Positions 1-62,367 of a DNA stretch of 64,000 nucleotides are shown here, piece by piece. The position numbers and the translations under genes are program-made. The DNA is taken from positions 62,001 to 126,000 of IMG/VR virus record IMGVR_UViG_3300027816_000051; one strand, 5' to 3'. Position 1 is the first letter of the stretch. Each line of letters opens with the position of its first letter. The notes beneath the pieces are model-generated. The model saw nothing but the letters and a program-made list of their open reading frames with translations. It did not search any database and was not told the origin of the DNA.

Positions 1-2304
1 ATTCTCACAATTCAAAGATGGGGTGAGTATACCAACAATTGGTCTTTTAGTGATGAAGATGGAAATATTAAGTTACCATTTATTGCTGTTGTAAGAAAAC
101 CTGAAGTTCAGTTAGGTACAAACCCATCTATTCAAAGAACTATTCCTGATAGAAGAGACTTTTTTTATGCATCGGTTCCGACTTGGGATGGAAATCAAAT
201 GGGTGCGGACATATACAAAATACCTCAACCAATTGCGGTTGATATTAGTTTTGATGTAACTATTGTTTGTACAAAATTTAGAGATATAAATAAGTTCAAT
301 CAAAAGGTTTTACAAAAGTTTTCATCTCGTCAAGCATACACTCGAGTAAAAGGTCATTATATCCCAATTGTATTAGATAGAATCGAAGATAATACTCCGA
401 TGGATACTTTAGATGGTAGAAGATTCTACATTCAAAATTACGGGTTTACAATGTTAGGATTCTTAATTGATGATGAAGAATTTGAAGTTTCTCCTGCAAT
501 TAACAGAAGTATTACCATGGTGGAACCCGATTTAAGGTCAATTCCATCTATAAAAAAAATTGAAAACTCAATAACAATATCATCAAATTATAGTAGTGGT
601 TCAATCGTTGCGGACTACACCGCAACCGCAACAAATAAGGTAGATAAGACGGTTGAAATTTCATTTACTGACACTTTATTAACTGTGACTGGTAGTTCAA
701 TATCAATTCCTGTTAAAATTTTTATTGAACCAAATCAATTAAGTGGTACTACACAATATACTGTCGATGGTACGTTTAGTAATTTAACTTTGGTTAATAA
801 TTTTAGTTCGGTAGATATTAATACGTCGTCTAAAACAAAATTTAGATATGATTTTACAACACAATCAACTTTTACAATACCAATAACACCGACCCCAACA
901 CCTTCAATAACACCATCTTCATCTGTAACACCATCAATAACCCCAACATCAACACCTACGGTTACCCCTACTTTAACCTCAACCTCTATTATCACCCCAA
1001 CCATAACTGTAACACCTTCAGTTACCCCCTCAGTAACACCGTCAATTACTCCGTCACTTACATCATCGGTTACACCAACCCCTACTTTAACCTCAACACC
1101 CACAGTTACCCCTTCGGTAACAATTGAGTCTTCACCGACACCATCACCAACTCAATCAGTAACACCATCCATTACTCCCAATAGTTCTGTCACACCATCG
1201 GCCACCCCAACACCATCATTGATGGTGGATGATAAACTATTAATTTCTGGTGGATTCTCATTATACAATGGCACATTATATAATGACATAATTAAATTAA
1301 ACTCAAATGGTTCAGTTGATAGTTCATTTAGCGGTGGAACCGGATTTGATAATTTCTTAGAAAATCACATAATATATAATAACAAAATTTACGGTGCGGG
1401 TTATTTTACAACATACAGTGGTGTATCGTCCAATTATATAATTAGATTAAACTTAGACGGTTCAATCGATAATACATTCAGTATCGGAACGGGATTCAAT
1501 AGTATCACAAAATTTGTTGTACCCCAATCTGATGGAAAACTATTAATCGGTGGATATTTTACATCATATAATGGCACGTCGGCGAATAAAATTATTAGGT
1601 TAAATTCTGACGGAACAATTGATAATACATTTAGTGGTTCAACGTCTACTACTTATGATGCAAACTCAACTGTTCAAGATGTTTCTTTACAATCAGATGG
1701 TAAAATGATTCTTTGTGGTAGTATGACCACAAGAAGAATTGAGAGACTTAATTCCGATAAGAGTCACGATTCTAGTTTTACAACTACAGTCGGTACGGGA
1801 TTTAATGCCTACACATACATGTCATCGGTACAATCAGATGGTAAGATTGTCGTTGGTGGAGATTTTACATCATATAGTGGAGTGACATCTAATAGAATAA
1901 TTAGATTAAATTCCGGAGGAACTATCGATGATACATTTATTATTGGAACCGGATTTAATAATAGTGTTTATTTTGTCTCGACTCTTTCAAGTGGTAAAAT
2001 AATGGTCGGGGGAGCTTTCACATCGTATAGTGGTGTAACATCTAATAGGATAGTTAGACTAAATTCTGATGGAACTATTGATAATACATTTAGTATTGGA
2101 ACCGGATTTAATAATCATGTACTCAGTATTGTTGTTCAAACAAATGGTAAAATACTAATTAGTGGTAATTTTACATCATATAACGGCACATCGGTAGGAA
2201 ACATTGTACGTTTATTTTCAGATGGAACTTTAGACACGACACTTAATACCGGTACAGGATTTGGTTCTGGAGCAACAATCACAACAGTAACCCCAATAAA
2301 TTAA
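1..2304 (+). CDS. 5'-truncated tail-completion/terminator-like (T4 gp15-like) protein fused to a Pro/Thr linker and a 7-repeat delta-60-type beta-propeller
   Basis: The frame is open from base 1 ([10 protein letters not shown]...), so the ORF-track start at 199 is internal. The gene lies upstream of the sheath gene. It has a TPS/TPT linker at about 880-1220, then seven repeats of the QSDGK-hhhGG-F-SY-G...RLNSDG-hD-TF type. The gp15-like call rests on position and fold-like pattern only. Confidence 0.6.
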
Positions 2305-2541: not shown

Positions 2542-2718
2542 TTAATCTCCATAGATATCTTTTTTCTTAGGTGAATCATTCACCTTTCCTGTTTTACAAA
2601 CTTCATCAATCCATTTCTGAACAACCTTATAAATTTTTAATCCATTTTTGTCGCAATATTCTTTTAACATTTGGTGGTGATTTTCACTAACCTTTATGTT
2701 TTTTAGGGTGTTTTTCAT
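2542..2718 (-). CDS. small ribbon-helix-helix-like DNA-binding protein (58 aa; absent from the ORF track)
   Basis: Manual translation gives MKNTLKNIKVSENHHQMLKEYCDKNGLKIYKVVQKWIDEVCKTGKVNDSPKKKDIYGD*. The pattern is a short strand (KNIKVS), helix, G turn, helix. It fills an otherwise empty gap and has TATTTAT 7 nt upstream on the minus strand. Confidence 0.7.
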   Translation of the reverse strand: MKNTLKNIKVSENHHQMLKEYCDKNGLKIYKVVQKWIDEVCKTGKVNDSPKKKDIYGD

Positions 2719-2855: not shown

Positions 2856-5711
2856 ATGGCAAATTCAAATAGAGTTTTTGTATCTCCGGGTGTATATACA
2901 TCTGAAAAAGACTTAACATTCGTAGCACAAAGTGTTGGTGTGAGCACATTAGGTTTGGTGGGTGAAACCTTAAAAGGTCCCGCTTTTGAACCTGTATTAA
3001 TAACTAATTTTGACGAATTCAAGTCATATTTTGGGGGAACAAGTCCGTTAAAAGACAACAATAACAATCCAAAATATGAATTACCTTATTTCGCAAAATC
3101 TTATTTAGAAGAATCTAACCAAATGTTTGTAACAAGAATATTAGGTTTAACGGGTTATTTACCTGTCAAAACTTATGGTGTTAAAACAATTGGTGGGGTT
3201 ACATTGGGGGCTCTTAGTGGAACAACCACAAGTTTAACAATGTCAGCATCGACCACAACAATTACAGCAAGTACGATTTATAGTGAACTATCAGATAAAA
3301 TATCTGTAGATGGAAATTATATTACAGAATATATTGTAGCAAACTTTAGTGGTAACACATCATCTAACCATGGACAATGGTTTGTGATGGGTGAAGTACC
3401 AACTTCAGGAACAAGTGGTCAAACATCATCACTTGAAGAAGTTTCTCCTTTAACAGGTTTGAATAACGCAAGTAATTACAACAATAAGGAATGGTTCAAT
3501 AAACTTTGTAACACCACAGGTTCTGAAGTATATTCTTACTTATTTGTTTATAACAGCGGTGCGAGTAGATTTGATGTGACTAAGTACACATACTATGGAA
3601 CATTGAACACGGCGTATGATGGACAAGTGGTTTTAGCGTTCAGACCAAGAGGTTCTTACAATGGACAAACATTAAACTTGGAAACTACCGCAGATGTAAA
3701 TTTTGTGGTTACAGGTTCAGGAATCACTACAAATCCATTAGCTGAATTTACAGTTAATGTTACAGGTTCAACAAGTGGACCAAAATCATTCACTTGTAGT
3801 ATGGACTCTTCGTCATCAAAATATGTAACAAAAGTTTTTGGTACCGATGTTTATGACAAATTAAAAAGTGATGTACCTGTGTATGTTTTTGAATCTTATC
3901 CAAATTACTTACAAAGAGCATATGAACAAGGTTTAATTAGAGGTTTAAGTTTAACAGAAGTTTTCGAACATGTTGGTAACGACTTTAAAACATCTTGGGA
4001 TACCCCAATGACACCAACTGTTGTATCAGAGGTTAGAGGTGGTGAAGTTGATGATTTATTTGATGTAATCACAGTATCAGATGGTGATTCTGCAAACTAC
4101 GAAGTAAAAGTTTCAATTATTAATATTGATGTAAACACTGGTGACTTTGACTTAATCGTTAGAGACTTTAATGATACAGACGATAATTTAGTTGTACTTG
4201 AAAAATTTGGTAGATGTAATATGAATCCAGATTTACCAGGATATGTTGCTAAAAAAGTTGGTACATCTGATGGTGAATATGAATTACGTTCAAGATACAT
4301 TATGTTGTCAATGGCTGATAATCACCCAACCGACGCATATCCTGCAGGATTTAAAGGATTTACAAACAACACATCTTTTGGTTCAAGTACTTTAGGTTCG
4401 GTGATGTACAAGACTACATTCTATAACGCTGGTGATACTACATCTTATCAAGCCGATGGAACACCTGTTTTATCTTCAGGTGACAAAGTAAGAAGAACAT
4501 ACTTTGGTTTATCAAGTCCAACAAACGCAGTAACATACGATAGAGACTTGTTTAAATTCAAAGGAACATCAGCAGCTGGAACAACTAAGGGTTTCCACTT
4601 ATCAACAAACGCATCTACAATCACAGGAACAACCTTCTTAACCACGTCGTATGATTTAGAGGGTCAAACAGGTGGAGCGAATAACGTATTAACAAATATC
4701 AATTATCGTAAATTCACATTCGCAGCGGCTGGTGGATTTGACGGTTGGGATATCTACAGAAATGTGAGAACCTACGGTGATGGATACATCTTTGGTAAAA
4801 ATACTTACACAAGTGGTAACACTAATAATGGTGGTGTATTTAGTACAGTATCAGGAAACTCTGACTACTACGCTTACACTCAAGGTATTGATACCTTCGC
4901 AAACCCTGAAGCTGTTGATGTAAACATCTTCGCAACACCAGGTATCAACTTCTATGACCACAGTTCATTAACATCTTACGCAATTGATATGATTGAAGAA
5001 GATAGAGCGGATTCACTTTATGTGATTTCATCACCAAACTACGGTACAGCGGATGAAGTAATAGACGCTTTGGACGGCGTAGCAATTGATAGTAACTACT
5101 CAGCGGTTTACTGGCCTTGGATTCAAGTTAGAGACGCAGACAACGCTACACAATTATACTTACCACCAACAGGTGAAGTATTGAGAAATATAGCATTAAC
5201 AGATAACGTATCTTTCCCTTGGTTCGCGGTAGCGGGTTATTCAAGAGGTTTAGTAAACTCAATCAAAGCTTATAAGAAATTAACTTTGGATGAGAGAGAT
5301 GACCTTTACAAAGCGAGAATTAACCCTATCGCAACATTTGCGGATACCGGTACAATCATTTGGGGTAATAAAACACTTCAAGTACGTGAATCAGCTTTGG
5401 ATAGAATTAACGTAAGAAGATTACTGTTAAGAGCAAGAAAATTAATTTCAGCAGTAGCGGTAAGATTGTTATTTGAACAAAACGACGAACAAGTTCGTAA
5501 TGAGTTTTTGAGATTGGTTAACCCGATATTAGACGCAATTAAGAGAGAAAGAGGTTTGTATGAATTCCGTGTAACGGTTTCCAACGACCCTGAAGATATT
5601 GACGCTAATACTTTGAGAGGTAAAATTTACATTAAACCAACAAGAGCTCTTGAATTTATCGATGTTGAATTCATAATCACACCAACAGGAGCATCATTTG
5701 ATAATATCTAA
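2856..5711 (+). CDS. contractile tail sheath protein (T4 gp18-like)
   Basis: N-terminal VSPGVYTSEKD and GETLKGPAFEP. C-terminal YWPW, PWFAVAG, INPIATF, IWGNKTLQ, LDRINVRRLL, FEQND and IYIKPTRALEFI motifs, all typical of sheath proteins. Confidence 0.95.
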   Translation: MANSNRVFVSPGVYTSEKDLTFVAQSVGVSTLGLVGETLKGPAFEPVLITNFDEFKSYFGGTSPLKDNNNNPKYELPYFAKSYLEESNQMFVTRILGLTGYLPVKTYGVKTIGGVTLGALSGTTTSLTMSASTTTITASTIYSELSDKISVDGNYITEYIVANFSGNTSSNHGQWFVMGEVPTSGTSGQTSSLEEVSPLTGLNNASNYNNKEWFNKLCNTTGSEVYSYLFVYNSGASRFDVTKYTYYGTLNTAYDGQVVLAFRPRGSYNGQTLNLETTADVNFVVTGSGITTNPLAEFTVNVTGSTSGPKSFTCSMDSSSSKYVTKVFGTDVYDKLKSDVPVYVFESYPNYLQRAYEQGLIRGLSLTEVFEHVGNDFKTSWDTPMTPTVVSEVRGGEVDDLFDVITVSDGDSANYEVKVSIINIDVNTGDFDLIVRDFNDTDDNLVVLEKFGRCNMNPDLPGYVAKKVGTSDGEYELRSRYIMLSMADNHPTDAYPAGFKGFTNNTSFGSSTLGSVMYKTTFYNAGDTTSYQADGTPVLSSGDKVRRTYFGLSSPTNAVTYDRDLFKFKGTSAAGTTKGFHLSTNASTITGTTFLTTSYDLEGQTGGANNVLTNINYRKFTFAAAGGFDGWDIYRNVRTYGDGYIFGKNTYTSGNTNNGGVFSTVSGNSDYYAYTQGIDTFANPEAVDVNIFATPGINFYDHSSLTSYAIDMIEEDRADSLYVISSPNYGTADEVIDALDGVAIDSNYSAVYWPWIQVRDADNATQLYLPPTGEVLRNIALTDNVSFPWFAVAGYSRGLVNSIKAYKKLTLDERDDLYKARINPIATFADTGTIIWGNKTLQVRESALDRINVRRLLLRARKLISAVAVRLLFEQNDEQVRNEFLRLVNPILDAIKRERGLYEFRVTVSNDPEDIDANTLRGKIYIKPTRALEFIDVEFIITPTGASFDNI

Positions 5712-5717
5712 TAAAAA

Positions 5718-5742
5718 GGGGAGGGGAAACCCTCCCTATTTT
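5718..5742 (+). terminator. intrinsic terminator after the sheath gene
   Basis: GGGAGGG-GAAA-CCCTCCC hairpin followed by TATTTT and preceded by an A run. Confidence 0.75.
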
Positions 5743-5743
5743 A

Positions 5744-5759
5744 TGTTCCACGTGGAACA
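5744..5759. promoter_or_regulatory. parS-type centromere palindrome
   Basis: TGTTCCACGTGGAACA is a perfect 16-bp palindrome (18 bp with flanks). It matches the bacterial chromosomal parS consensus TGTTNCACGTGNAACA and is intergenic. Confidence 0.75.
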
Positions 5760-5839
5760 TTATAATATAGTGTGACCTACGGAATTACCAAATATAAAAA
5801 AAATAAAATTATAAATTACCCAGTATATGCACCAGTATT

Positions 5840-5936
5840 CTAGTTCTAGTTCTAGTTTATTTTTATCTAGTTTATTTCTTTATAGTTATTCTAGTTTCTT
5901 TAATCTAGTTCTTAATTTACTAGCATCTAGTACTAG
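5840..5936. repeat. CTAG/TCTAGT short-repeat array in a T-skewed non-coding tract
   Basis: CTAG occurs at 5840, 5846, 5852, 5867, 5891, 5905, 5920, 5927 and 5933 (9 copies in 97 bp). I found no credible ORF on either strand. Confidence 0.85.
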
Positions 5937-5943
5937 TATGGAA

Positions 5944-5972
5944 AAAATACGAAATAATTTTCACAAAATCAA
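5944..5972 (-). promoter_or_regulatory. candidate sigma70-like promoter pointing into the CTAG array
   Basis: The minus strand reads TTGATT-N17-TATTTT (cttgattttgtgaaaattatttcgtattttt). Confidence 0.35.
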
Positions 5973-6059
5973 GTATTGAGAAGATTTTTTTTGTTTTTTC
6001 ATATACAACATATTTATAAGAAAGATTAAAAATAAAAAAATTAAAAAACAAATATTGAC

Positions 6060-6548
6060 ATGGCAGATTTATTAATGAAAATGCCGGTTCCTTACGAACC
6101 GAAGAGAGTTAACCGATTCATACTTAGATTCCCATCATCATTGGGTATTAACGAGTGGTACGTAACCTCAAGTGCAAGACCTAGTGCAAAAATTAACTCA
6201 GTTGCAATTCCTTTCATCAACACATCAACATACGTAGCTGGTAGATTTGAATGGAATGAAATAAGAGTAACCTTCAAAGACCCTATTGGTCCTTCAGCGG
6301 CACAAGCATTGATGGAGTGGTTCCGTCTACACGCTGAATCAGTTACAGGTCGTATGGGTTACGCAGCTGGTTACAAAAAAGATATTGAATTAGAAATGTT
6401 AGACCCAACGGGGGTTGTGGTTGAAAAATGGATACTTCAAGGTTCTTTCATAACCGACTTAAACTTTAACGAACTTGATTATTCAAGAGATGATATTGCA
6501 TCTATCACATGTTCGTTAAGAATGGATAGATGTATATTAGTTTACTAA
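6060..6548 (+). CDS. tail tube protein (T4 gp19-like)
   Basis: 162 aa, directly after the sheath gene. Motifs include EPKRVNRF, YVAGRFEW, YKKDIELEMLDPTGVVVEKW and ELDYS. Confidence 0.92.
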   Translation: MADLLMKMPVPYEPKRVNRFILRFPSSLGINEWYVTSSARPSAKINSVAIPFINTSTYVAGRFEWNEIRVTFKDPIGPSAAQALMEWFRLHAESVTGRMGYAAGYKKDIELEMLDPTGVVVEKWILQGSFITDLNFNELDYSRDDIASITCSLRMDRCILVY

Positions 6549-26879: not shown

Positions 26880-27857
26880 ATGACAGAGAAGATTTTGAAA
26901 GAAAATCCAGGACGTTTTGTCCTTTTTCCAATCGAACACCACGACATTTGGAAACTTTACAAACAACAAGAAGCATGTTTTTGGACTGCTGAAGAAATTG
27001 ATTTAGCTCAAGACATTTATGATTGGGAAAACAAACTAAATGAAGATGAACAACATTTTGTTAAAAACGTATTAGCATTTTTCGCCGCTTCGGATGGTAT
27101 TGTAAATGAAAACATTGCAATGAATTTTGTGAATGCGGTACAATATACGGAAGCTAAAATGTTTTATGGTTTCCAAATCATGATGGAAAATATTCACAGT
27201 GAAACTTATTCTTTGTTGATTGATACATATATCAAGGATAAACAAGAACAAGGTAGATTATTTAATGCAATTGACACAATCCCTGCTGTTAAGAAAAAGG
27301 CGGAATGGGCGTTAAAGTATATTGAAAAGGGTACCTTCGTTGAAAGACTTATTGCCTTTGCTGCTGTTGAGGGTATTTTCTTTTCTGGCTCATTCTGTTC
27401 TATTTTCTGGCTCAAAAAACGTGGTTTAATGCCGGGTTTAACCTTTTCAAATGAGCTTATTTCAAGAGATGAAGGAATGCACTGTGACTTTGCTTGTCAT
27501 TTGTTTAATCACCATATTGAAAATAAATTAAGTGAGAAGAGAATTAAAGACATTATCTGTGGAGCTTTAGAGATTGAAAAAGAATTTATTTTAGAGGCAC
27601 TACCTGTTAAACTAATTGGTATGAATTCAGATTTGATGTCTCAATATTTGGAATTTGTGACCGATAGACTATTAATGTCATTAAATTGTTCAAAGGTCTA
27701 CAATGTTGAAAATCCATTTGATTTCATGCAAAATATTGCTCTTCAAGGTAAGACTAATTTCTTTGAAAAAAGAGTTGCTGAATATCAAAAAGCTGGTGTG
27801 AATAATAACGTTTCCATTGAAGATATGGATACATCATTTGAAGATATAGATTTTTAA
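26880..27857 (+). CDS. nrdB: ribonucleotide reductase class Ia beta subunit
   Basis: [47 protein letters not shown] and NFFEKRV. Confidence 0.97.
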
Positions 27858-45858: not shown

Positions 45859-45977
45859 TAAAAACTGTAAAAATAGACGTTGACAATACCCGAATAAATG
45901 AGTATATTTTTATAATAAAAATAGATATAGATAAGACTGTAGATTTAAATGGCATTAATAAAAATAAACACAGGTAA
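45855..45977 (+). CDS. possible 40-aa bridging mini-ORF
   Basis: ATGA overlap with the upstream stop. [40 protein letters not shown] overlaps the start of the giant gene. Confidence 0.3.
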   Translation: MIKTVKIDVDNTRINEYIFIIKIDIDKTVDLNGINKNKHR

Positions 45978-48900
45978 TTTTGATGGTGAAATTGGTGTTA
46001 TCACATTTTATCCTTGTACTGGCGGTACCTTGAATTTAGGTACTGTCGTGATGCCATATTATTACGACACAAACTACTACTTAGGTACTTACTCAGTTTA
46101 TTTTCCGTCACTTGATAAAACTTGTGTGGCTGAGATTCCTTGCCCTACACCTTCACCTACACCTTCACCAACACTTACACCATCATTAACACCAACACCA
46201 ACAACCTTTACTTCAAATACCCCAACCCCAACAGTTACCAAAACCCCTACTGTTACACCTACGGTTACAAAAACACCTACTGTTACCCCAACCAATACTA
46301 TCACTCCAACAAATACTCCTACGAATACCGTAACTCCGACTAATACTCCAACAAACGAGCCTACAGTTACCCCAACTGAAACTCCTACAGTTACTCCAAC
46401 TAACACAGTAACTCCAACCAATACCCCAACAAATACCCCAACGGTTACCCCAACTGAAACTCCTACAGTTACCCCAACTAACACAGTAACTCCAACCGAA
46501 TCACCAGCCAACACACCTACTGTAACTCCTACGAATACAGTTACACCAACCGAGACACCAACTGTTACTCCGACCGAAACTCCAACTGTAACCCCAACAA
46601 ATACGGTAACCCCAACCAATACACCAACTGAAACACCTACCAACACCCCAACAAATACAGTTACCCCTACCGAAACTCCAACTGTAACTCCAACAAATAC
46701 GGTAACCCCTACCGAAACACCTACCAATACACCAACTCATACAGTAACCCCTACCGAAACACCAACCAATACCCCAACTAATACACCGACTGAAACACCC
46801 ACTAACACCCCAACAAATACTGTTACCCCAACTAATACACCAACCGAAACACCAACCGAAACACCAACCAATACCCCAACCAACACCGTAACTCCAACTG
46901 TTACCCCAACTGTTACCCCAACTGTAACTCCAACCAATACTGTTACCCCAACTAATACACCAACCGAAACACCAACCGAAACACCAACCAATACTCCAAC
47001 CAACACCGTAACCCTAACCGTTACCCCTACCGAAACACCAACCAACACCCCAACTAATACTCCGACTAACACAGTAACACCAACACTGAGTCCAACCGTT
47101 ACCCCTACCGAAACACCTACCAATACCCCAACCAACACCATAACACCAACTAACACTCCGACTAATACCTCAACTGTAACTCCAACCAATACTGTAACTC
47201 CAACCAATACACCCACTGTAACACAAACTGAAACACCTACCCTAACACCAACAAATACTGCAACCGTTACACCAACTCAAACCCCAACCAATACTCCTAC
47301 CAATACTGTTACACCAACGGTTACCCCAACTAACACTCCAACTGTAACTCCAACAAATACGGTAGCTCCAACTAATACACCTACAAATACACCAACCGAA
47401 ACACCAACAAATACCCCCACCAACACACCAACAAATACTCCCACAGAAACACCAACACTTACACCAACCAACACCGTAACCCCTACCAATACAGTCACAC
47501 CAACCAATACTGTTACAGTGACTCCAACAGAAACTGTGACACCAACTAATACACCTACAAACACCCCAACTAATACACCAACAAATACGGTTACACCTAC
47601 GAATACTCCAACCAACACAGTAACTCCAACAAATACTCCAACTAACACTCCAACATTAAGTCCTACCAATACCGTAACTCCTACCAACACCCCAACAAAC
47701 ACACCGACGAATACAGTAACTCCAACTCAGACACCTACAAATACTCCTACAAATACCGTTACACCAACCAATACCCCAACCAATACCCCAACCAACACCG
47801 TAACTCCAACAAACACTCCTACCAACACTCCTACAAACACTCCCACAAATACCGTAACTCCAACCAACACCGTAACTCCGACTAATACACCTACAAACAC
47901 ACCAACGAATACTGTGACTCCTACATTGAGTCCTACGGTAACACCAACTAACACCGTAACACCAACCAATACTCCAACCAATACACCTACCAATACTGTG
48001 ACTCCTACATTGAGTCCTACGGTAACACCAACTAACACCGTAACACCAACCAATACTCCAACTAACACGCCGACCAACACTCCTACTAACACTGTAACAC
48101 CAACATTGAGTCCAACAGTGACTCCAACCAATACAGTTACCCCCACAAACACCCCGACAAATACTGTAACTCCAACCAATACTGTAACTCCAACAAATAC
48201 ACCAAGTGTAACTGTGACGGTTTCACCAACACCAGCACCTTCTTGTGACATTGATTATACAATGTTACCCTCACCAACTCCAACGAGCACCCCAACACCC
48301 ACCAATACTCCAACGGTAACACCAACCAACACTGTAACACCATCCGTTACATTAACCAATACTCCCACAAACACACCAACCAATACAGTAACTCCTACTA
48401 ACACCCCAACTAATACACCAACAAAAACTGTTACACCAACTTTAACTCCAACAAATACTCCAACTAATACTGTAACACCAACCAATACACCAACAAACAC
48501 TCCTACCAATACAGTTACTCCTACATTGAGTCCAACAGTTACTCCTACCAATACTGTTACCCCAACCAATACTCCTACCAATACCCCAACCAATACAGTT
48601 ACACCTACATTGACTCCAACAGCGACCCCAACCAACACCGTAACCCCTACAAATACCCCAACATTAAGCCCCACCAATACTCCAACCAACACCGTAACCC
48701 CTACAAATACTGTAACACCAACGAATACCCCAACCAACACTCCGACAAACACCCCAACAAACACTGTAACACCAACCAACACTCCAACAAACACTGTAAC
48801 ACCGACCAATACTCCAACAAATACCCCTACTAATACTGCTACTCCTACAAATACACCAACTAATACTCCTACCAATACGGTAACCCCTACAAATACACCA

Positions 48901-51900
48901 ACTAACACTCCTACCAATACGGTATCCCCAACACTGACACCTACTAACACCCCTACGAACACCGTAACACCAACAAACACACCAACTAACACACCAACTA
49001 ATACTGTAACACCAACTAACACTCCTACCAACACCCCAACCAACACAGTTACTCCTACCAATACGCCAACTAATACTCCTACCAATACGGTAACGCCAAC
49101 ATTGAGTCCAACAGTGACTCCAACCAATACCGTTACACCAACTCAAACCCCTACAAATACCCCAACTAACACCGTAACACCAACCAATACACCTACGAAT
49201 ACCCCCACTAATACTCCAACAAATACCGTAACCCCAACAAACACGCCTACGAATACACCAACAGTAACCCCTACCAATACCGTAACCCCAACAAATACAC
49301 CGACGGTAACTCCGACCAATACAGTCACACCAACTAATACACCAACCAACACTCCTACCAATACGGCTACCAATACAGTTACTCCTACCAATACACCCAC
49401 AAATACACCAACAAATACGGTTACACCAACTAACACTCCTACTAATACTCCAACAAATACCGTAACACCGACACTGACACCTACAAATACCCCGACAAAC
49501 ACTCCAACCAATACAGTTACTCCAACCAATACTGTAACTCCTACCAACACCCCTACCAACACCCCAACAAATACTCCAACAAATACAGTCACCCCAACTA
49601 ATACTCCAACCAATACTGTCACCCCTACCAATACTCCTACAAACACCCCCACCAATACTGTCACCCCTACCAATACTCCTACCAATACTCCTACAAATAC
49701 AGTAACTCCAACTAACACCCCAACAAATACTCCAACAAATACAGTCACCCCAACCAATACTCCTACCAATACGCCCACCAATACTGTCACCCCTACCAAT
49801 ACTCCTACCAATACTTCTACAAATACAGTAACTCCAACTAATACTCCTACCAATACGCCTACTAATACTGTAACTCCAACCAACACCCCAACTGTAACTC
49901 CTACCAATACTGTTACACCAACAAACACTCCTACTAACACACCAACCAATACTGTTACACCAACAAACACTCCTACTAACACACCAACCAATACGGTAAC
50001 TCCTACCAACACCCCAACTAACACACCAACCAATACGGTAACTCCTACCAACACCCCAACTAACACCCCAACAAATACTGTTACACCAACAAATACTCCC
50101 ACCAATACCCCAACAAACACGGTGACTCCAACAAACACTCCTACTAACACCCCAACAAATACAGTAACACCAACATTGAGTCCTACAGTAACTCCTACGA
50201 ACACAGTAACTCCTACAAATACTCCCACAAACACTCCGACCAACACCGTTACACCAACAAATACCCCAACCAATACCCCGACAAATACAGTAACCCCAAC
50301 TAACACACCTACCAACACTCCAACTAATACAGTAACTCCCACATTAAGTCCAACTGTGACTCCTACTAATACTGTGACTCCTACAAACACTCCTACCAAC
50401 ACACCAACAAATACAGTTACACCTACATTGAGTCCAACAGTGACTCCAACCAGCACCGTAACCCCAACTAATACGCCAACATTAAGTCCTACCAATACTC
50501 CAACCAACACTGTTACTCCTACAAATACCGTTACACCAACCAATACACCTACCAATACCCCAACAAACACCGTAACCCCAACACTAACCCCAACTAACAC
50601 TCCAACCAATACTCCTACAAATACGGTATCTCCAACCAACACCGTAACCCCAACAAATACACCAACTAACACTCCAACCAATACTCCCACCAACACTGTT
50701 ACTCCAACCAACACCCCGACCAACACTCCGACTAATACAGTAACTCCTACCAATACCCCAACAAATACCCCAACAAATACAGTTACACCTACATTGAGTC
50801 CAACGGTGACTCCTACTAATACTGTAACTCCTACCAACACTCCGACCAACACACCAACCAATACTGTTACACCTACATTGAGTCCAACGGTGACTCCTAC
50901 TAATACTGTTACACCCACTAACACGCCAACTAACACTCCTACTAACACTGTAACACCAACTCAGACTCCCACGAACACGCCTACAAATACAGTAACACCT
51001 ACTAACACACCTACTAATACACCAACAAATACGGTAACACCAACCAACACCCCTACGAACACGCCGACTAACACCCCAACCAATACAGTCACACCAACTA
51101 ATACCGTAACTCCAACAAATACGCCAACCAATACTCCTACCAATACGCCAACCAATACCGTAACACCAACTCAGACACCGACAAATACCCCAACAAAAAC
51201 TGTTACACCAACATTGAGTCCGACTGTGACACCAACAAATACTGTTACTCCAACCAATACCCCCACCAATACTCCAACTAACACAGTAACCCCAACCAAT
51301 ACTCCAACTGTAACACCTACGAATACTGTTACACCTACAAATACACCGACGAATACACCAACCAATACGGTAACTCCAACCAACACCCCAACCAATACCC
51401 CAACTAGTACTGTTACACCAACATTAAGCCCGACACTAACACCAACCAATACAGTAACTCCAACATTGAGTCCGACTGTAACTCCAACAAGAACGGTTAC
51501 ACCTACTTTAACACCAACCAATACACCGACAAATACGGTAACCCCTACAAATACTCCCACCAACACCCCAACAAACACTCCAACCAATACAGTCACCCCA
51601 ACAAACACCGTAACACCAACCAACACCCCCACAAACACTCCAACCAATACTCCAACAAACACCGTAACACCAACCAACACACCAACCAAGACTGTAACTC
51701 CAACCAATACCCCAACCAATACTCCAACTAATACAGTAACCCCAACTAATACACCAACCAATACTCCAACGAACACCGTAACTCCAACCAACACCCCAAC
51801 CAACACTGTAACTCCAACAAATACACCTACAGTTACCCCGACTAACACAGTAACACCTACACTGAGTCCGACTGTAACCCCTACGAATACAGTTACACCA

Positions 51901-54900
51901 ACTCAGACACCTACAAATACTCCAACTAACACCGTAACTCCTACCAACACACCAACTAACACACCAACTAACACTGTTACACCCACAAATACACCAACCA
52001 ATACAGTTACTCCTACCAATACACCTACTAACACTCCAACTAACACAGTAACCCCTACCAATACCCCTACGAACACTCCTACTAATACAGTAACTCCTAC
52101 AAACACCGTAACACCAACCAACACACCAACCAATACTCCAACCAACACTGTCACCCCTACATTGAGTCCTACGGTAACTCCTACGAACACAGTTACCCCT
52201 ACTAACACACCGACTAAGACCGTGACTCCCACATTGAGTCCGACTGTGACTCCTACAAATACTGTTACACCAACTCAAACCCCTACGAATACACCAACTA
52301 ATACAGTTACACCAACTAATACACCTACAAACACCCCAACAAATACAGTTACACCTACAAATACCCCAACTAACACTCCAACCAATACAGTAACCCCTAC
52401 ACTGAGTCCAACCGTAACACCAACTAATACTGTCACACCCACGAATACACCAACCAATACCCCTACGAATACTGTAACCCCTACCAACACCCCTACTAAT
52501 ACTCCTACAAATACGGTTACACCAACTAACACTCCAACAAGAACGGTTACACCTACTTTAACACCAACCAATACACCGACAAATACGGTAACCCCTACAA
52601 ATACTCCCACCAATACCCCAACAAACACGGTGACTCCTACATTAACACCAACTGTAACTCCTACAAATACCGTAACACCAACCAATACTCCTACAAATAC
52701 TCCTACTAACACAGTAACACCTACCAATACCCCTACAAACACACCAACAAACACTGTAACTCCAACTAACACCCCTACTAATACTCCGACGAATACGGTA
52801 ACTCCAACCAATACCCCAACAAACACACCTACCAACACCGTAACACCTACAAATACTCCTACTAAAACTGTGACTCCCACATTGAGTCCAACAGTTACAC
52901 CTACCAACACCGTAACACCTACAAATACTCCCACAAATACCCCTACTAACACAGTAACACCAACAAATACACCAACCAACACTCCAACTAATACCGTTAC
53001 CCCAACTAACACACCTACAAATACACCAACAAATACTGTGACTCCTACATTGAGTCCAACAGTTACACCTACCAACACCGTAACACCTACAAATACCCCT
53101 ACCAACACCCCAACAAATACAGTAACACCTACATTGAGTCCGACTGTGACTCCAACTAACACCGTTACGCCAACTAACACACCTACCAACACTCCAACTA
53201 ACACCGTAACCCCTACCAGCACCCCCACAAGAACCGTTACACCTACATTAACTCCAACCAATACCCCTACTAATACCGTAACCCCAACAAATACCCCAAC
53301 CAATACCCCTACTAATACCGTAACCCCAACAAATACCCCAACAAACACTCCAACTAATACCGTAACCCCAACAAATACCCCAACAAACACTCCAACTAAT
53401 ACCGTAACCCCTACCAACACCCCCACAAGAACCGTTACACCTACATTAACTCCAACCAACACACCAACTAATACTGTAACCCCAACCAACACTCCTACAA
53501 ACACTCCAACGAATACAGTTACACCAACCAATACACCAACTAACACCCCAACCAACACTGTAACTCCAACATTGAGCCCTACAGTGACTCCCACTAATAC
53601 AGTTACACCAACTAACACACCAACCAATACCCCAACCAACACCGTAACTCCAACAAACACCCCTACTAAAACTGTAACTCCCACATTGAGCCCTACGGTA
53701 ACCCCAACAAACACTGTTACTCCAACCAACACCCCAACTAATACTCCAACTAATACTGTTACTCCAACCAACACCCCAACCAACACCCCAACTAATACTG
53801 TTACACCGACCAACACACCAACGAATACTATAACTCCTACTAATACTCCTACCAAAACTGTTACACCAACTCTAACCCCAACGAATACACCGACCAATAC
53901 TCCTACAAACACAGTAACCCCAACCAATACCGTAACACCAACTAACACTCCAACCAACACTGTAACTCCAACTAATACACCAACCAACACCCCAACTAAT
54001 ACTCCGACAAACACTGTTACGCCAACCAATACACCAACAAAAACTGTCACACCAACTTTAACCCCAACCAACACCGTAACACCAACCAATACCCCGACTA
54101 ATACACCTACAAATACTGTTACTCCAACTAATACACCTACAAACACTCCAACCAACACCGTAACCCCAACCAATACACCAACTAATACGGTGACTCCCAC
54201 ATTGAGTCCTACGGTAACTCCTACAAATACTGTAACCCCTACTAATACTCCTACCAAAACTGTTACACCAACTCTAACCCCAACGAATACTCCTACCAAT
54301 ACTGTAACCCCTACCAATACTCCTACCAATACTGTAACCCCTACCAATACTCCTACCAATACTCCAACAAATACTGTTACCCCAACTCAGACACCTACTA
54401 ACACTCCAACGAATACAGTCACACCAACCAACACACCAACTAATACTGTAACTCCTACATTGAGTCCTACGGTAACTCCGACCAATACGGTAACCCCAAC
54501 AAACACACCAACTAACACACCAACTAATACTGTAACGCCAACTAATACACCAACAAAAACTGTTACACCAACTTTAACTCCAACCAATACCCCAACTAAT
54601 ACTGTAACACCTACCAATACACCAACAAACACTGTTACGCCAACTTTAACTCCAACCAATACCCCGACCAATACCCCAACAAATACCGTTACTCCAACCA
54701 ACACAGTTACCCCGACCAATACCCCAACTAAGACAGTCACCCCAACTCAGACTCCCACCAATACTCCAACCAATACCCCCACAAACACTGTAACTCCAAC
54801 AAACACTGTTACGCCAACAAATACTCCAACTAATACGGTAACACCGACTAACACTGTAACGCCGACCAATACCGTAACCCCCACTAACACTGTAACTCCA

Positions 54901-57900
54901 ACGAATACAGTTACACCGACCAATACTCCAACAAGAACTGTTACGCCTACCTTAACCCCTACAAATACTCCAACAAATACGGTAACTCCGACCAACACAC
55001 CAACTAACACACCAACTAACACAGTTACCCCGACTAACACCCCAACCAATACGGTAACCCCTACTAACACACCTACTAATACACCAACCAAGACTGTTAC
55101 TCCTACATTAACTCCTACCGTTACTCCAACGAATACAGTTACACCGACCAATACCCCGACTAATACTAATACCCCTACTAATACACCTACAAACACTCCT
55201 ACTAACACAGTAACCCCAACCAATACACCAACAAAAACTGTCACACCAACTTTAACCCCAACAAATACACCGACCAACACACCAACTAATACAGTGACTC
55301 CAACCAATACTGTTACCCCAACAAACACTCCAACCAAGACTGTTACTCCTACATTAACACCAACCAACACTCCGACCAATACGGTAACCCCTACAAATAC
55401 CCCAACTAACACCCCAACAAACACTGTTACGCCAACTAATACACCAACCAAGACTGTTACTCCTACATTAACTCCAACCAATACCCCTACTAATACCGTA
55501 ACCCCAACAAATACCCCAACAAACACTCCAACCAATACTGTAACACCAACGAATACTGTTACCCCAACATTGAGTCCTACTAATACCCCAACTAATACTG
55601 TAACACCCACCAACACACCCACCAACACACCAACAAATACTGTTACACCAACCAATACACCAACAAAAACCGTAACACCTACATTAACACCAACAAACAC
55701 TCCTACAAACACCCCAACAAATACCGTTACTCCAACCAACACCGTAACCCCAACTAACACACCAACTAATACGGTGACTCCCACCAATACCGTTACACCT
55801 ACAAACACTGTTACACCTACTAATACTGTTACACCTACTAATACTGTAACACCAACTAATACACCAACCAAGACTGTAACACCTACATTAACTCCAACCA
55901 ATACTCCAACAAACACCGTAACACCAACTCAGACACCGACTAATACTCCTACAAATACCGTAACTCCTACCAATACACCAACAAAAACTGTCACACCAAC
56001 TTTAACTCCAACAAATACCCCAACCAATACTGTTACACCAACTCAAACCCCTACGAATACACCAACTAATACAGTTACACCAACTAACACAGTCACCCCG
56101 ACCAACACACCTACCAATACCCCAACCAATACTGTTACACCTACCTTAACTCCTACAAATACTCCTACAAATACAGTAACCCCAACCAATACACCAACAA
56201 AAACCGTAACACCTACATTAACACCAACAAACACTCCTACAAACACTCCCACGAATTCCGTTACTCCTACTAATACTGTTACCCCCACTAACACCCCAAC
56301 TAACACAGTAACGCCGACTAATACTGTTACTCCAACCAATACCGTAACTCCTACAAATACGGTAACCCCAACCAATACTGTAACGCCAACTAATACCCCA
56401 ACCAAGACAGTTACACCAACTCAGACACCTACTAATACACCAACCAACACTGTAACACCAACTAACACACCTACCAACACTCCAACTAACACCGTAACTC
56501 CTACTAATACACCAACAAAAACTGTTACACCAACTCTAACACCAACAAATACCCCTACGAACACTGTAACTCCAACCAATACACCAACAAAAACTGTTAC
56601 ACCAACTTTAACTCCGACCAACACGGTAACCCCAACCAATACTCCTACTAATACTCCTACTAATACAGTAACCCCCACCAATACTCCGACCAATACGGTG
56701 ACTCCCACATTGAGTCCTACAGTTACCCCTACGAACACCGTTACACCAACAAATACCCCAACCAAGACTGTAACTCCTACATTAACTCCTACAAATACCC
56801 CTACTAATACTGTAACCCCTACCAATACTCCAACTAATACACCTACTAAAACTGTCACCCCTACAGTTACTCCTACTAATACAGTTACCCCAACCAACAC
56901 TCCCACAAACACTCCTACAAACACTGTAACCCCTACATTGAGTCCTACAGTTACCCCTACGAACACCGTTACACCAACAAATACCCCAACCAATACTCCG
57001 ACAAATACAGTTACACCGACCAATACGCCCACAAATACTCCTACTAATACTGTTACACCCACTAACACCCCAACAAATACTCCAACAAATACAGTTACAC
57101 CGACCAATACACCCACAAATACACCAACAAATACAGTTACACCGACCAACACACCAACAAAAACTGTAACACCAACTTTAACTCCAACCAATACACCCAC
57201 AAATACACCAACAAATACGGTTACACCAACAAATACAGTAACCCCAACTAATACACCGACTAAGACAGTCACCCCAACCAATACCCCAACAAATACTCCA
57301 ACCAACACACCAACTAACACGGTTACCCCAACCAATACTGTTACACCAACAAACACACCCACTAATACACCAACCAAGACTGTAACTCCTACATTGAGTC
57401 CTACAGTTACTCCTACTAATACAGTAACACCCACCAACACACCAACTAACACGGTTACCCCAACCAATACACCAACCAAGACTGTTACACCTACATTAAC
57501 ACCTACTAATACTCCGACCAATACTGTAACCCCTACATTGAGTCCTACAGTTACCCCTACGAACACCGTTACACCAACAAATACTCCTACAAACACCCCA
57601 ACCAAGACTGTTACACCTACATTAACACCTACTAATACTGTTACACCTACATTAACACCAACCAATACTCCAACGAACACTCCTACCAATACTCCTACAA
57701 ACACGGTAACACCAACAAACACTGTTACACCAACAAATACTCCTACAAACACTCCGACCAAGACTGTTACACCTACATTAACACCTACTAATACTCCTAC
57801 GAATACTGTTACCCCAACAAATACTCCAACAAGAACTGTTACTCCTACATTAACACCGACCAATACTCCTACGAATACTGTTACCCCAACAAATACTCCA

Positions 57901-60900: not shown

Positions 60901-62367
60901 GTTACACCAACTTTAACTCCTACATTAACACCAACAAGCACAGTAACACCATCACCATCCTTACAGGTTGGTTATGTTTATTTATTACCATGTTGTGATG
61001 GTGGTATTTTAGGTAATACTATTTCTTATTTAAGTATAACAACTAATTTGACCTATGTTCAAAGCGGTATTTCACAAGGTCAAACTATTGTTATAAATGG
61101 ATGTTGTTATTTTGTTGAAGGTTATAGTCAAACCTACTCACCACCAAACTTTAGTGGGGTTGACGGGTATTATCCACCATCATCATTTAGTGTTGATACA
61201 TGTGAAACATGTATTGGAGCTAACCCATGCGCCACTTGGATTTTCGATTTACAAAGATGTGGATGTTGTGGTACAACAGGACAATATACAATTCAATTTG
61301 GTTGTCAAAATGGATTTAACCCAAATCTTTTAGTAAACCGTTATATATCAATTAATGGTTGTTGTTATTTTGTTACAAACTCAGTCGGACCAGGAGTACC
61401 TGGTTCCGCAATCACTGCGTATGGTACATACAATACATGTACTGAATGTGAAACTTATCACCCTTGTCCTTCACCAACCCCAACAGTTACACCAACAGTT
61501 ACACCAACTTTAACCCCAACAAAAACACCGACAAATACACCAACAAGGACAGTTACTCCAACTTTAACACCAACCAATACTCCTACAAATACACCAACCA
61601 AGACTGTAACTCCAACCTTTACCCCTACAAATACACCAACCAAGACTGTAACTCCAACCTTTACCCCTACAAATACTCCAACCAAGACTGTAACTCCAAC
61701 CTTTACCCCTACAAATACTCCAACAAGGACAGTTACTCCAACTTTAACACCAACCAATACTCCTACAAATACACCAACCAAGACTGTAACTCCAACAAAC
61801 ACTCCAACAAACACTCCAACACCATCTCCGGTTTCAAATCCGTCATCAACCCCAACCCCAACTCCAACTCCGACCCCAACCCCAACTCCACCATGTGTTT
61901 GTGAGTCATATATTATTACAGGATTAGGACCTGGTAATATAGTTAACTATACCACTTGTTGCGGTGGAGGAACACCCACAGAAATACTTGACCCAAATGT
62001 GTACCCAGCAAGTGGTACAATTGAGATATGTTCATGTAGTATTCCAAGTGTATTAGGTCCTTATGGTGGGGAGATAACGTATGATGGTGCTTGTGGTGAT
62101 TGTTTGTGTACAGACTTTTTTGTTGATATTAATGATTTAACAGCCTCAGATGATAATCAAGTATACTTTGCATACCAATGTTGTGATGGTACATTCACAA
62201 CACAAGGTTATAACGCCCCTGGTAATTATAGCGTTTGTCTTATGAGAGTGACAAATGTGTTTATATTGTTTAGAGGAAACTTCGTACCACCAATATATAC
62301 TTCGCAATATACATACGGTACTGGTTGTGGTGATTATTGTAACACATTTTGTGGAGAAGCATGTTAA
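45949..62367 (+). CDS. giant mucin-like Thr/Pro-repeat protein (5472 aa) with Cys-rich terminal modules; putative virion fibre
   Basis: Uninterrupted 16.4-kb frame. It has a unique N-domain of about 65 aa, about 4750 aa of TPTN/TVTP repeats, then Cys-rich modules separated by shorter PT linkers. It lies right after the baseplate block. The function is inferred. Confidence 0.8.
46144..60390 (+). repeat. degenerate coding tandem repeat (12- and 18-nt units encoding TPTN and TPTNTV)
   Basis: ACN-CCN-ACN-AAY and ACN-GTN units with varied third positions. The + strand is extremely A/C-rich and G-poor. Confidence 0.95.

What the first reader, a model, noticed from the sequence alone, without database searches (positions are those of the whole stretch)
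5743..5972. Candidate phage origin/segregation locus between sheath and tube genes: parS, CTAG array and inward promoter
Seen: the sheath-tube gap is about 350 bp and non-coding. In order it holds a terminator, the perfect palindrome TGTTCCACGTGGAACA, an A-rich tract, nine CTAGs in 97 bp of T-skewed DNA, and a minus-strand TTGATT-N17-TATTTT pointing back into the array. Established: the 16-mer fits the chromosomal parS consensus bound by ParB, parS sites cluster near bacterial origins, and T4 origins use a promoter plus a downstream unwinding element. Inference: this myovirus may recruit host or its own ParB/SMC at a transcription-primed origin, to position or segregate its genome or to titrate host ParB. 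No parA or parB is visible in the window.
Basis: partly seen in the sequence, partly recalled or inferred. Interest (0 to 1): 0.85.

Follow-up and report, generated by a model that had tools for sequence, protein, structure and literature searches.

The report
Conserved non-coding cassette before tube gene
Between the tail-sheath and tail-tube genes of an uncultured T4-like jumbo phage (probably of Flavobacteria-type hosts) lies a roughly 230-bp non-coding cassette kept in about 95 relatives, holding a parS-like palindrome, a CTAG-rich hairpin and a promoter-like block; it looks more like a control or RNA-stability element for late tail genes than a replication origin or segregation site, though those are not excluded.

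Summary
The palindrome TGTTCCACGTGGAACA (5744-5759) is unique in 64 kb and matches the chromosomal parS of Pseudomonas. Nine of the window's 43 CTAGs lie in 97 bp of a CTAG-depleted genome.

Across 95 distinct relatives the gap has a fixed order: terminator, palindrome, AT-rich spacer, long inverted repeat closed by CCCAGTAT/ATACTGGG and filled with CTAG/CTGG units, a conserved block, then ATATTTATAA and an A-rich leader before the tube ATG. More distant phages (Flavobacterium phage immuto, Microcystis phage Mel-JY01) have only the terminator and ATATTTATA, so the roughly 200-bp cassette is a family-specific addition.

The hairpin shows a sense-strand RNA signature: G·U far outnumber A·C mismatches, as in the terminator. 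The palindrome behaves like a protein site on DNA. One half is near-invariant, the centre is variable, copies are sometimes duplicated, and it is absent in about 20% of relatives.

The window has no ParA or ParB and no skew inflection.

Best reading (about 0.4): a cis-acting regulatory and RNA-structure cassette for late tail-gene expression. Origin and ParB readings remain minority options.

The parts
2856..5711 (+). Tail sheath gene (951 aa), upstream neighbour
   Evidence: phrog_23 tail sheath E=1e-59. Pfam Phage_sheath_1 and Phage_sheath_1C.
5718..5743 (+). Intrinsic terminator of the sheath transcript (stem 5718-5737, then TATTTTA)
   Evidence: Scored on both strands. In relatives the stem sequence changes freely with compensatory pairs. 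It has about 36 G·U against 1 A·C on the + strand, so it is tuned for the + strand.
5744..5759 (.). Perfect 16-bp palindrome TGTTCCACGTGGAACA, a parS-type sequence and likely a protein-binding site on DNA
   Evidence: Unique in the window and identical to Pseudomonas parS. Kept with up to 3 mismatches in 76 of 95 relatives. The left half is near-invariant and positions 9, 10 and 16 are variable. Extra half-sites or duplicated copies occur in L033, L058, L054, L006, L071 and L369.
5760..5818 (.). AT-rich spacer with TATA-type boxes and an A-tract. In most relatives it is a fixed 33-nt spacer with three TATA boxes.
   Evidence: The consensus after the palindrome reads TTTTATAA..ATTATAC..TTTATAC, then CCCAGTAT.
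5819..5941 (+). Long imperfect inverted repeat (hairpin). It contains CCCAGTAT (5819-5826), a second CCAGTAT (5832-5838), nine CTAGs (5840-5936) and the right end ACTAGTATGG.
   Evidence: - RNA fold of the + strand is -23.3 kcal/mol, z = -2.25. The minus strand gives z = -0.70.
- Of 52 relatives, 40 fold better on the + strand.
- 91% of cells are paired in three helices.
- G·U 68 against A·C 15.
- The consensus fold finds the long hairpin only on the + strand.
- It is the only CTAG cluster in the window and in the 12.5-kb loci checked.
5940..5975 (.). Most conserved block (GGAAAAAATACGAAATAATTTTCACAAAATCAAG in the window).
   Evidence: Present in 93 of 95 relatives. On the minus strand, TTGAYW-N17-TAKTTT keeps constant spacing in most, with TTGACA or TTGACT in several.
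5976..6009 (+). Variable T-rich spacer (T8 G T6 at 5985-5999)
   Evidence: It is not conserved in sequence between clades.
6010..6024 (+). ATATTTATAAGAAAG, candidate late promoter of the tube gene
   Evidence: - ATATTTAT lies within 75 nt of the tube ATG in 95 of 95 relatives.
- It is also present before the tube genes of Microcystis phage Mel-JY01 and Flavobacterium phage immuto.
- TATTTAT[AT] occurs 15 times on + and 3 times on -, with 9 copies within 70 nt upstream of gene starts.
6025..6059 (+). A-rich leader without a Shine-Dalgarno sequence
   Evidence: Genes across the window lack Shine-Dalgarno sequences.
6060..6548 (+). Tail tube gene (162 aa), downstream neighbour
   Evidence: phrog_4542 tail tube E=1e-24. 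Weak Pfam T4 gp19 match.

Best explanation
The sheath-tube gap holds a family-specific, self-contained non-coding cassette of about 230 bp. It was inserted between the sheath terminator and the ancestral tube late promoter (ATATTTATAA). I read it as a cis-acting control and RNA-structure module for late tail-gene expression.

**Shown**
- The order of parts is fixed: terminator, palindrome, spacer with TATA boxes, hairpin, conserved block, late promoter, leader.
- The hairpin's pairing is kept, and its mismatches are of the G·U type on the sense strand, as in the terminator.
- The palindrome varies like a protein-binding DNA site.

**Inferred**
- The hairpin is made as sense-strand RNA. It comes either from read-through of the sheath terminator or from a late-like TTTATA box that ends 7-8 nt before CCCAGTAT. 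The second route would place the hairpin at the very 5' end of a long tube transcript.
- As a terminal or intercistronic stem-loop it would stabilise or mark for processing the sheath and/or tube mRNA.
- The palindrome is centred about 41 nt upstream of the hairpin base in most relatives. Together with the TTGAC-N3-GTCAA palindrome, it is an operator for an unidentified phage or host DNA-binding protein that tunes this transcription.
For: - **Fixed architecture.** Seen in 56, then 95, distinct relatives.
- **Family-specific addition.** Distant relatives have only the terminator plus ATATTTATA in gaps of 45-94 bp.
- **Independent modules.** Homing-endonuclease or YkuD gene insertions split the gap only at module borders: terminator | palindrome+hairpin+block | late promoter.
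- **Hairpin pairing and strand bias.** 91% of cells are paired. G·U 68 against A·C 15, or 62 against 6 in the inner helices. The terminator control gives about 36 against 1. RNAalifold recovers the long hairpin only on the + strand. Mean z is -2.88 on + and -2.26 on -, and + is more stable in 40 of 52.
- **Unavoidable sense transcription.** In L027 and L030 the hairpin follows the sheath stop with no terminator.
- **Spacing.** The palindrome-to-hairpin distance is 30-34 nt (mostly 33) in most relatives, with a conserved TTTATA box just before the hairpin.
- **Palindrome behaviour.** Asymmetric conservation, duplicated sites, and C·A 8 against G·U 2 on the + strand argue for a DNA site rather than a sense-strand RNA stem.
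Against: - Covariation is not significant against shuffles, because the paired columns are nearly invariant.
- Single-pair changes at the closing stem include one each of G-C, G·U and A·C.
- The stems are short (4-8 bp) and weak. The two arms gain and lose CTAG units independently.
- In one large clade the two arms are also direct repeats (ACTGGAACTAG). This alone would create the G·U bias.
- The interior is inverted in some clades. Motif identity (CTAG, CCAGTAT) is conserved more than structure, which suits a DNA-binding protein equally well.
- In L041 and L369 a 1.7-kb endonuclease gene separates the cassette from the tube promoter, so it need not act directly on the tube.
- No transcript data are available.
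- No Rfam family matches.
Confidence: 0.4

Rival explanations
1. The locus is a DNA-level protein-binding array. The CTAG/CTGG/CCAGTAT units are tandem and inverted binding sites (an operator or iteron-like array) for an unidentified DNA-binding protein. Hairpin potential is a by-product of palindromic units.
For: - Copy number ranges from 0 to 11 with slippage-like gain and loss, and unit periods are 6 or about 15 nt.
- Interior orientation and AT skew flip between clades without loss of the element.
- Direct repeats ACTGGAACTAG occur in both arms.
- CTAG is concentrated about 50-fold in a CTAG-depleted genome.
- TGGAAC is shared by the arms and the palindrome.
Against: - No cognate protein is identified. 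The neighbouring ribbon-helix-helix repressor gene has AGATAA-type repeats and no CTAG at its own operator.
- The G·U over A·C bias and the + strand-only consensus fold are not predicted by this reading.
- A 6-nt unit spacing does not place sites on one face of the helix.
Confidence: 0.25
2. The conserved block is a leftward promoter firing into the hairpin. It makes a roughly 220-nt antisense-strand non-coding RNA ending at the two-way sheath terminator. This RNA is either a regulatory RNA or, the primer RNA of a T4-type R-loop origin.
For: - Minus-strand TTGAYW-N17-TAKTTT keeps constant spacing in most relatives. This also reads as TTG-N20-TAnnTTT, close to the Flavobacterium-type promoter consensus as I recall it.
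- The predicted start lies 2-6 nt from the hairpin base.
- The sheath terminator scores on both strands.
- In L054 and L055, minus-strand YkuD genes sit exactly between the palindrome and the terminator, where such a transcript would express them.
- The window has T4-like replication genes.
- The cassette is autonomous and single-copy.
Against: - The long hairpin is poorer on the minus strand, with z near 0 in a whole clade and A·C where + has G·U.
- The terminator stems are tuned for the + strand, with about 24 A·C mismatches on the minus strand.
- Such loose promoter matches are common in this AT-rich DNA (26 on the minus strand).
- There is no skew inflection.
- The purine-rich transcript property is not conserved.
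- As I recall, T4 origins need only an unwinding element, not conserved repeats.
Confidence: 0.13
3. The palindrome is a working parS. Host ParB, or a phage ParB encoded outside the window, loads there to position, condense or silence phage DNA, or to be titrated away from the host chromosome.
For: - The 16-mer is identical to known chromosomal parS. The conserved heptamers GTTCCAC and GTTTCAC are the half-parS sites bound by several ParB proteins.
- The consensus parS is also used to find sites in Bacteroidota genomes.
- Extra half-sites or duplicated sites occur in some relatives.
- The exact 16-mer occurs in at least 120 unrelated viral contigs, some with typical double parS.
Against: - Only 5 of 95 relatives are perfect. 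The central CACGTG is often changed to CACGCG, CACGAG, CACATG and others.
- 19 of 95 relatives lack it.
- There is one site and no half-site excess in 64 kb.
- No ParA or ParB is found in the window.
- The fixed 33-nt distance to the hairpin suggests a local transcription-factor role.
- I know of no precedent in a lytic T4-like phage, and the literature searches found only plasmid-prophage cases.
Confidence: 0.1
4. The cassette is a decayed small mobile element (MITE-like, flanked by inverted repeats) or a relic with no present function.
For: - It is an addition relative to distant phages.
- It has terminal inverted repeats CCCAGTAT/ATACTGGG and an AT-rich interior.
- The gap is a hot spot for mobile endonuclease genes.
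Against: - It is single-copy in 64 kb. All 20 exact hits to the arm sequence in the viral collection lie in the same sheath-tube gap.
- Several blocks are strongly conserved across relatives whose tube proteins are 84-100% identical, while the terminator sequence drifts freely.
Confidence: 0.05

Closest known systems
Chromosomal parS of the ParABS system (Pseudomonas putida/aeruginosa TGTTCCACGTGGAACA; half-parS GTTCCAC/GTTTCAC)
   Same: The 16-mer is identical. The most conserved part in relatives is exactly the half-parS heptamer.
   Different: - It is a single site, not clustered, with no ParA or ParB nearby.
- It sits in a lytic-type T4-like phage late region.
- The centre of the palindrome is not conserved, and the element is dispensable in about a fifth of relatives.
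- It lies at a fixed distance from a hairpin.
T4 oriF/oriG-type origins (promoter plus downstream unwinding element; my own knowledge of Kreuzer-lab work)
   Same: The phage has T4-like replication proteins. A conserved promoter-like block faces an AT-rich, easily melted repeat region.
   Different: The downstream region carries conserved sequence motifs and an inverted repeat rather than a generic unwinding element. There is no skew signal, and strand composition flips between clades.
Intergenic mRNA stem-loops: T7 RNase III sites, REP-type intercistronic stabilisers, 5'-terminal stabiliser hairpins such as ompA (my own knowledge)
   Same: It is a long imperfect hairpin on the sense strand between two very highly expressed genes. 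Pairing is conserved with G·U tolerance.
   Different: - It is built from self-complementary CUAG/CUGG tetramers with many internal loops.
- Stems are short.
- Unit number varies.
- There is no cleavage or half-life evidence and no Rfam match.
Short-repeat operator or centromere arrays bound by ribbon-helix-helix or TrpR-type proteins (Arc TAGA boxes, TrpR CTAG operators, R1 parC; my own knowledge)
   Same: It has arrays of a 4-6-bp CTAG/TAGA-type unit in direct and inverted order, variable copy number and two clusters around an AT-rich centre.
   Different: No binding protein is identified. The adjacent ribbon-helix-helix gene uses a different repeat, AGATAA.
PeSL (promoter-early stem-loop) cassettes of T4-type phages (Arbiol, Comeau and Krisch 2010, recalled and not checked here)
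   Same: It is a small promoter-plus-stem-loop module in a T4-like genome, next to sites where extra ORFs are inserted.
   Different: PeSLs are multi-copy and flank hyperplastic regions. This cassette is single-copy and fixed between sheath and tube.

Membership tests
ParABS centromere (chromosomal-type parS) | 16-bp palindrome matching TGTTNCACGTGAAACA or TGTTCCACGTGGAACA | tested here: met
   Exact match at 5744-5759. The sequence is listed as parS of P. putida and P. aeruginosa.
ParABS centromere (chromosomal-type parS) | Cognate ParB (and ParA) encoded by the replicon | tested here: not met
   No ParB, ParA or related Pfam or PHROG hit in any window ORF. About 220 kb of the genome lies outside the window and was not testable.
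ParABS centromere (chromosomal-type parS) | Site sequence kept under ParB specificity in orthologous loci (central CACGTG, both halves) | tested here: not met
   There are 21 distinct 16-mers in 41 loci. Positions 9, 10 and 16 vary most. Only 5 of 95 are perfect and 19 of 95 are absent.
ParABS centromere (chromosomal-type parS) | ParB binding and spreading in vivo or in vitro | not testable with these tools
   Needs EMSA or ChIP-seq.
T4-type R-loop replication origin | Promoter directed into an AT-rich unwinding element | tested here: inconclusive
   Conserved minus-strand hexamers with 17-nt spacing face the AT-rich hairpin. By consensus alone the match is at chance level.
T4-type R-loop replication origin | Replication starts here (skew switch, coverage peak, bubble) | tested here: not met
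   Cumulative GC skew rises steadily through 5.8 kb. Coverage and bubbles are not testable.
Intrinsic terminator | GC-rich stem-loop followed by a T-run after a gene, with compensatory stem changes | tested here: met
   9 of 27 predicted pairs have double compensatory changes, mostly in the terminator.
Structured cis-acting RNA (intergenic hairpin) | Base pairing conserved across relatives | tested here: met
   91.4% of 509 cells are paired, against 26-45% when the partners are slid.
Structured cis-acting RNA (intergenic hairpin) | Significant covariation | tested here: inconclusive
   The covariation score of 0.144 equals the shuffled mean, and the paired columns are nearly invariant.
Structured cis-acting RNA (intergenic hairpin) | Strand-specific mismatch pattern (G·U tolerated, A·C avoided) | tested here: met
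   68 against 15 on the + strand. The terminator control gives about 36 against 1. The minus-strand consensus fold loses the hairpin. The counts are not phylogenetically independent.
Any Rfam family | Score at or above the family gathering threshold | tested here: not met
   Best matches are 25 bits against 48 (IMES-4) and 20 against 55 (STnc50).
Protein-coding small gene | ORF and reading frame conserved in relatives | tested here: not met
   The 50-aa ORF is confined to one clade, its frame differs in the conserved block, and the median longest ORF in gaps is 29 aa.

The most novel reading that the evidence does not exclude
A lytic-type, T4-like jumbo phage of Flavobacteriales carries a working host-type parS next to a repeat array. 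ParB CTPase clamps (host or phage) load on the phage chromosome at the late tail-gene cluster, either to organise or position replicating phage DNA or to gate late transcription. Possibly this is coupled to a transcription-primed origin firing leftward from the conserved block.
Probability: 0.12. Interest if true: 0.8.

Novelty: new variant of a known kind. Interest (0 to 1): 0.5.

Why it matters
- If the cassette is an RNA stabiliser or processing element with its own operators, it gives a defined, testable example of how uncultured Bacteroidota jumbo phages tune late structural gene output. Almost nothing is known about promoters or RNA elements in this host group.
- It also supplies a candidate late-promoter motif (ATATTTATAA) shared across genera.
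- If instead the parS-type palindrome is bound by ParB, this would be a first case of a virulent T4-like phage using the host chromosome-segregation machinery.
- In either case the locus is a compact, single-copy marker. Its repeat number varies between close relatives, so it could be used for strain typing of this abundant freshwater phage family.

Tried and rejected
- **GenBank phages.** Megablast of the locus found no match. Only distant protein-level relatives exist.
- **Rfam.** Nothing near threshold on either strand.
- **Small protein reading of the array.** Rejected because frame and ORF are not conserved.
- **Link to the neighbouring ribbon-helix-helix repressor (2542-2718, -).** Rejected. 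Its intergenic region is rich in AGATAA (25/kb) and has no CTAG.
- **Half-parS enrichment in the window.** None.
- **A shared promoter class CGTAKTTTT.** Not found.
- **Bacteroidota-type TTG-N19-TAnnTTTG promoters in window intergenic DNA.** None.
- **Sigma-70-type scans.** At chance level in this AT-rich DNA.
- **Covariation test on the hairpin.** Not significant.
- **Test for recent inversion of the hairpin interior.** Orientation differs between clades, but no near-identical pair with opposite orientation was found.
- **Collection search with (TCTAGT)3.** Uninformative. It is a common simple repeat in many unrelated viruses, including giant viruses.
- **Literature searches.** Searches for parS in lytic phages and for CTAG arrays in jumbo phages found nothing relevant.
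- **ParB elsewhere in the roughly 290-kb genome.** Not attempted. The tools fetch only about 10 kb around a match.

Full report
**What the window is.** The window carries T4-like tail and baseplate genes: sheath, gp19-type tube, gp25, baseplate J and a T4 baseplate protein. It also carries T4-like replication and recombination genes: gp32, a RecA/UvsX-like protein, a 5'-3' exonuclease, a DnaB/gp41-like helicase and ribonucleotide reductase. GC content is about 33% and all long ORFs are on the + strand. No gene start has a Shine-Dalgarno sequence. The NrdB protein is 72-78% identical to Bacteroidota genomes, mostly Flavobacteriales, in all 80 best genome hits. The host is therefore probably a Flavobacteriales bacterium, which is an inference. 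There is no close relative among GenBank phages. The best tube matches are 37-42% identical: Microcystis phage Mel-JY01, an uncultured 484-kb phage, and Flavobacterium phage immuto. In IMG/VR the tube protein has at least 600 relatives on contigs up to 334 kb.

**Observation check.** The gap 5712-6059 (348 bp) contains, in order:
- a terminator (stem 5718-5737);
- the perfect palindrome TGTTCCACGTGGAACA at 5744-5759;
- an A-rich tract;
- nine CTAGs at 5840-5936;
- the minus-strand hexamers TTGATT (5972-5967) and TATTTT (5949-5944).

The palindrome is unique in the window. CTAG is depleted genome-wide (43 against 119 +/- 10 expected), and this is the only cluster. By consensus alone the promoter is a weak match in DNA where such matches are at chance frequency. 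A 50-aa ORF across the array is not conserved.

**Comparative anatomy.** I extracted the sheath-tube gap from 80 and then 160 related loci, giving 56 and then 95 distinct sequences. The same order of blocks recurs:
1. A terminator whose stem sequence drifts freely with compensatory changes.
2. The palindrome, kept with up to 3 mismatches in 76 of 95.
3. An AT-rich spacer, in most relatives exactly 30-34 nt with three TATA-type boxes.
4. A 60-180-nt inverted repeat closed by CCCAGTAT/ATACTGGG and filled with CTAG, CTGG and CCAG units, with 0-11 CTAGs (median 3).
5. A highly conserved block (consensus GTAAAAAACTACGAAAAATAATTGACATAATCAAG) in 93 of 95.
6. A variable stretch.
7. ATATTTAT within 75 nt of the tube ATG in 95 of 95.
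8. An A-rich leader.

Flavobacterium phage immuto and Microcystis phage Mel-JY01 have gaps of only 45 and 94 bp. These hold the terminator (Mel-JY01) and the same ATATTTATA motif. Parts 2 to 5 are therefore a family-specific insertion of about 200 bp, and ATATTTATA is a good candidate for the late promoter of this wider phage group. In the window the motif TATTTAT[AT] occurs 15 times on + and 3 times on -, with nine copies just upstream of gene starts.

**Modularity.** Some relatives carry extra genes in the gap. These are homing endonucleases in L026 and L028 (+ strand) and in L041 and L369 (- strand), and YkuD L,D-transpeptidase-domain genes in L054 and L055 (- strand). The insertions fall only between the terminator and the palindrome, or between the conserved block and the late promoter. 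The cassette (palindrome, hairpin, block) therefore behaves as one autonomous unit. It is tied neither to the sheath terminator nor strictly to the tube promoter. All 20 exact matches to an 18-nt arm sequence in the viral collection lie in this same gap, once per contig.

**The CTAG array.** The array is not a free-standing run of sites. It is the interior of an inverted repeat.
- The window's + strand folds to -23.3 kcal/mol (z = -2.25). The minus strand gives z = -0.70.
- Over 52 relatives, mean z is -2.88 on + and -2.26 on -, and 40 are more stable on +.
- On an alignment of 33 sequences, three helices are paired in 91% of cells, against 26-45% when partners are slid. Covariation is not above shuffles, because the columns hardly vary.
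- Mismatches are strongly of the G·U type on the + strand: 68 against 15 A·C, or 62 against 6 in the inner helices. The sheath terminator, a known + strand RNA structure, serves as an internal control and shows about 36 against 1.
- RNAalifold recovers the long hairpin only on the + strand.

Some cautions apply. The counts are not phylogenetically independent. In the largest clade the arms are also direct repeats (ACTGGAACTAG), which would by itself give G·U pairs. The arms gain and lose units independently. The interior and its AT skew are inverted in some clades: -0.39 in the window and +0.37 to +0.41 in L030 and L045.

**The palindrome.** It is exactly the parS of P. putida and P. aeruginosa. 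GTTCCAC and GTTTCAC are the half-parS heptamers bound by several ParB proteins (PMC7022226). In the family the left half TGTTCCAC is nearly invariant, while positions 9, 10 and 16 vary, giving centres such as ACGC, ACGA, ACAT, ACAA and ACGG. Positions 5 and 12 vary independently. C·A mismatches outnumber G·U 8 to 2 on the + strand, so there is no sense-strand RNA signature. Extra half-sites or full duplicates occur: L033, L058, L054, L006 and L071, and two copies 48 bp apart in L369. Only 5 of 95 distinct relatives are perfect, and 19 of 95 have lost the element in several separate clades. This is the behaviour of a protein-binding DNA site with one dominant half-site, useful but dispensable. 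Its centre lies about 41 nt upstream of the hairpin base in most relatives. That position fits a promoter-proximal operator or activator site. In the window's clade the distance is 50-61 nt. Half-sites are not enriched in the window, and no ParA or ParB is encoded in it. The exact 16-mer occurs in at least 120 unrelated viral contigs, some next to terminators and some as typical double parS.

**The leftward promoter.** On the minus strand TTGAYW-N17-TAKTTT keeps its spacing in most relatives, with TTGACA or TTGACT in several. It overlaps the palindrome TTGAC-N3-GTCAA. Read as TTG-N20-TAnnTTT, it is near the Flavobacterium promoter consensus as I recall it. A leftward start would fall 2-6 nt from the hairpin base. 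The minus-strand YkuD genes of L054 and L055 sit just where such a transcript would run. Against this, both the hairpin and the terminator are tuned for the + strand, and there is no skew inflection at the locus. I keep this reading, with its origin variant, as a rival at about 0.13.

**Synthesis.** The best-supported reading (confidence about 0.4) is a cis-acting regulatory and RNA-structure cassette added upstream of the tube late promoter. It comprises a sense-strand hairpin that stabilises or marks sheath and tube RNA for processing, flanked by two operator-like palindromes. A purely DNA-level binding array (0.25), a leftward transcription unit or T4-type origin (0.13), a working parS (0.10) and a relic mobile element (0.05) are not excluded. 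Transcript mapping and a scan of the full genomes for ParB would settle most of this.

Noticed in passing
window 45949-62367 (+): A single 5472-aa ORF has GC 0.43-0.45 (against 0.33 elsewhere) and GC skew about -0.7. It is made of degenerate tandem repeats encoding (PTNT/VTPT)n, a giant Thr/Pro/Asn-rich, mucin-like protein. The first and last 1000 aa have no Pfam hit.
   Followed up: partly
window 2542-2718 (-) and 2719-2855: A 58-aa ribbon-helix-helix-type repressor gene (phrog_876 E=3e-5) is the only minus-strand gene here. It is conserved in all relatives and runs divergent to the sheath gene. AGATAA repeats lie in the shared intergenic region. An inverted repeat ATCTTTG-N7-CAAAGAT abuts the sheath's ATATTTAT motif.
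   Followed up: partly
window-wide; e.g. 2809, 6010, 7532, 9514, 30436, 32774, 40678: The motif TATTTAT[AT] is strand-biased (15 on +, 3 on -) and sits just upstream of many gene starts. The same ATATTTATA precedes the tube genes of Flavobacterium phage immuto and Microcystis phage Mel-JY01. It is a candidate late promoter for this broad T4-like group.
   Followed up: partly
L026, L028, L041, L369 (sheath-tube gap): Free-standing homing/HNH endonuclease genes (507-553 aa) are inserted in the gap on either strand and always at module borders.
   Followed up: partly
L054:1040-1738 (-), L055:3308-3991 (-): Genes with a YkuD L,D-transpeptidase catalytic domain are inserted on the minus strand between the sheath terminator and the palindrome.
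   Followed up: no
window 26880-27857 (NrdB): NrdB is 72-78% identical to Bacteroidota genomes, mostly Flavobacteriales, in all 80 best hits. With the lack of Shine-Dalgarno sequences, this points to a Flavobacteriales host.
   Followed up: partly
L082, L084, L120, L132, L143, L186; L115, L170, L190, L196, L197: In unrelated viral contigs (GC 23-50%) the same 16-mer often sits directly beside an intrinsic terminator. In one group it is the core of a 32-bp palindrome (CTGACAGA...TCTGTCAG) upstream of a gene start. L136, L167 and L200 show classic double parS.
   Followed up: no
window 199-2304 (+): A 701-aa protein with six DUF5122 beta-propeller repeats lies upstream of the sheath. A local GC-skew dip (-0.47 at 601-1200) occurs inside it.
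   Followed up: no
window 45880-45908 (+): A good TTGACA-N17-TATATT match lies in the 90-bp gap before the giant ORF.
   Followed up: no
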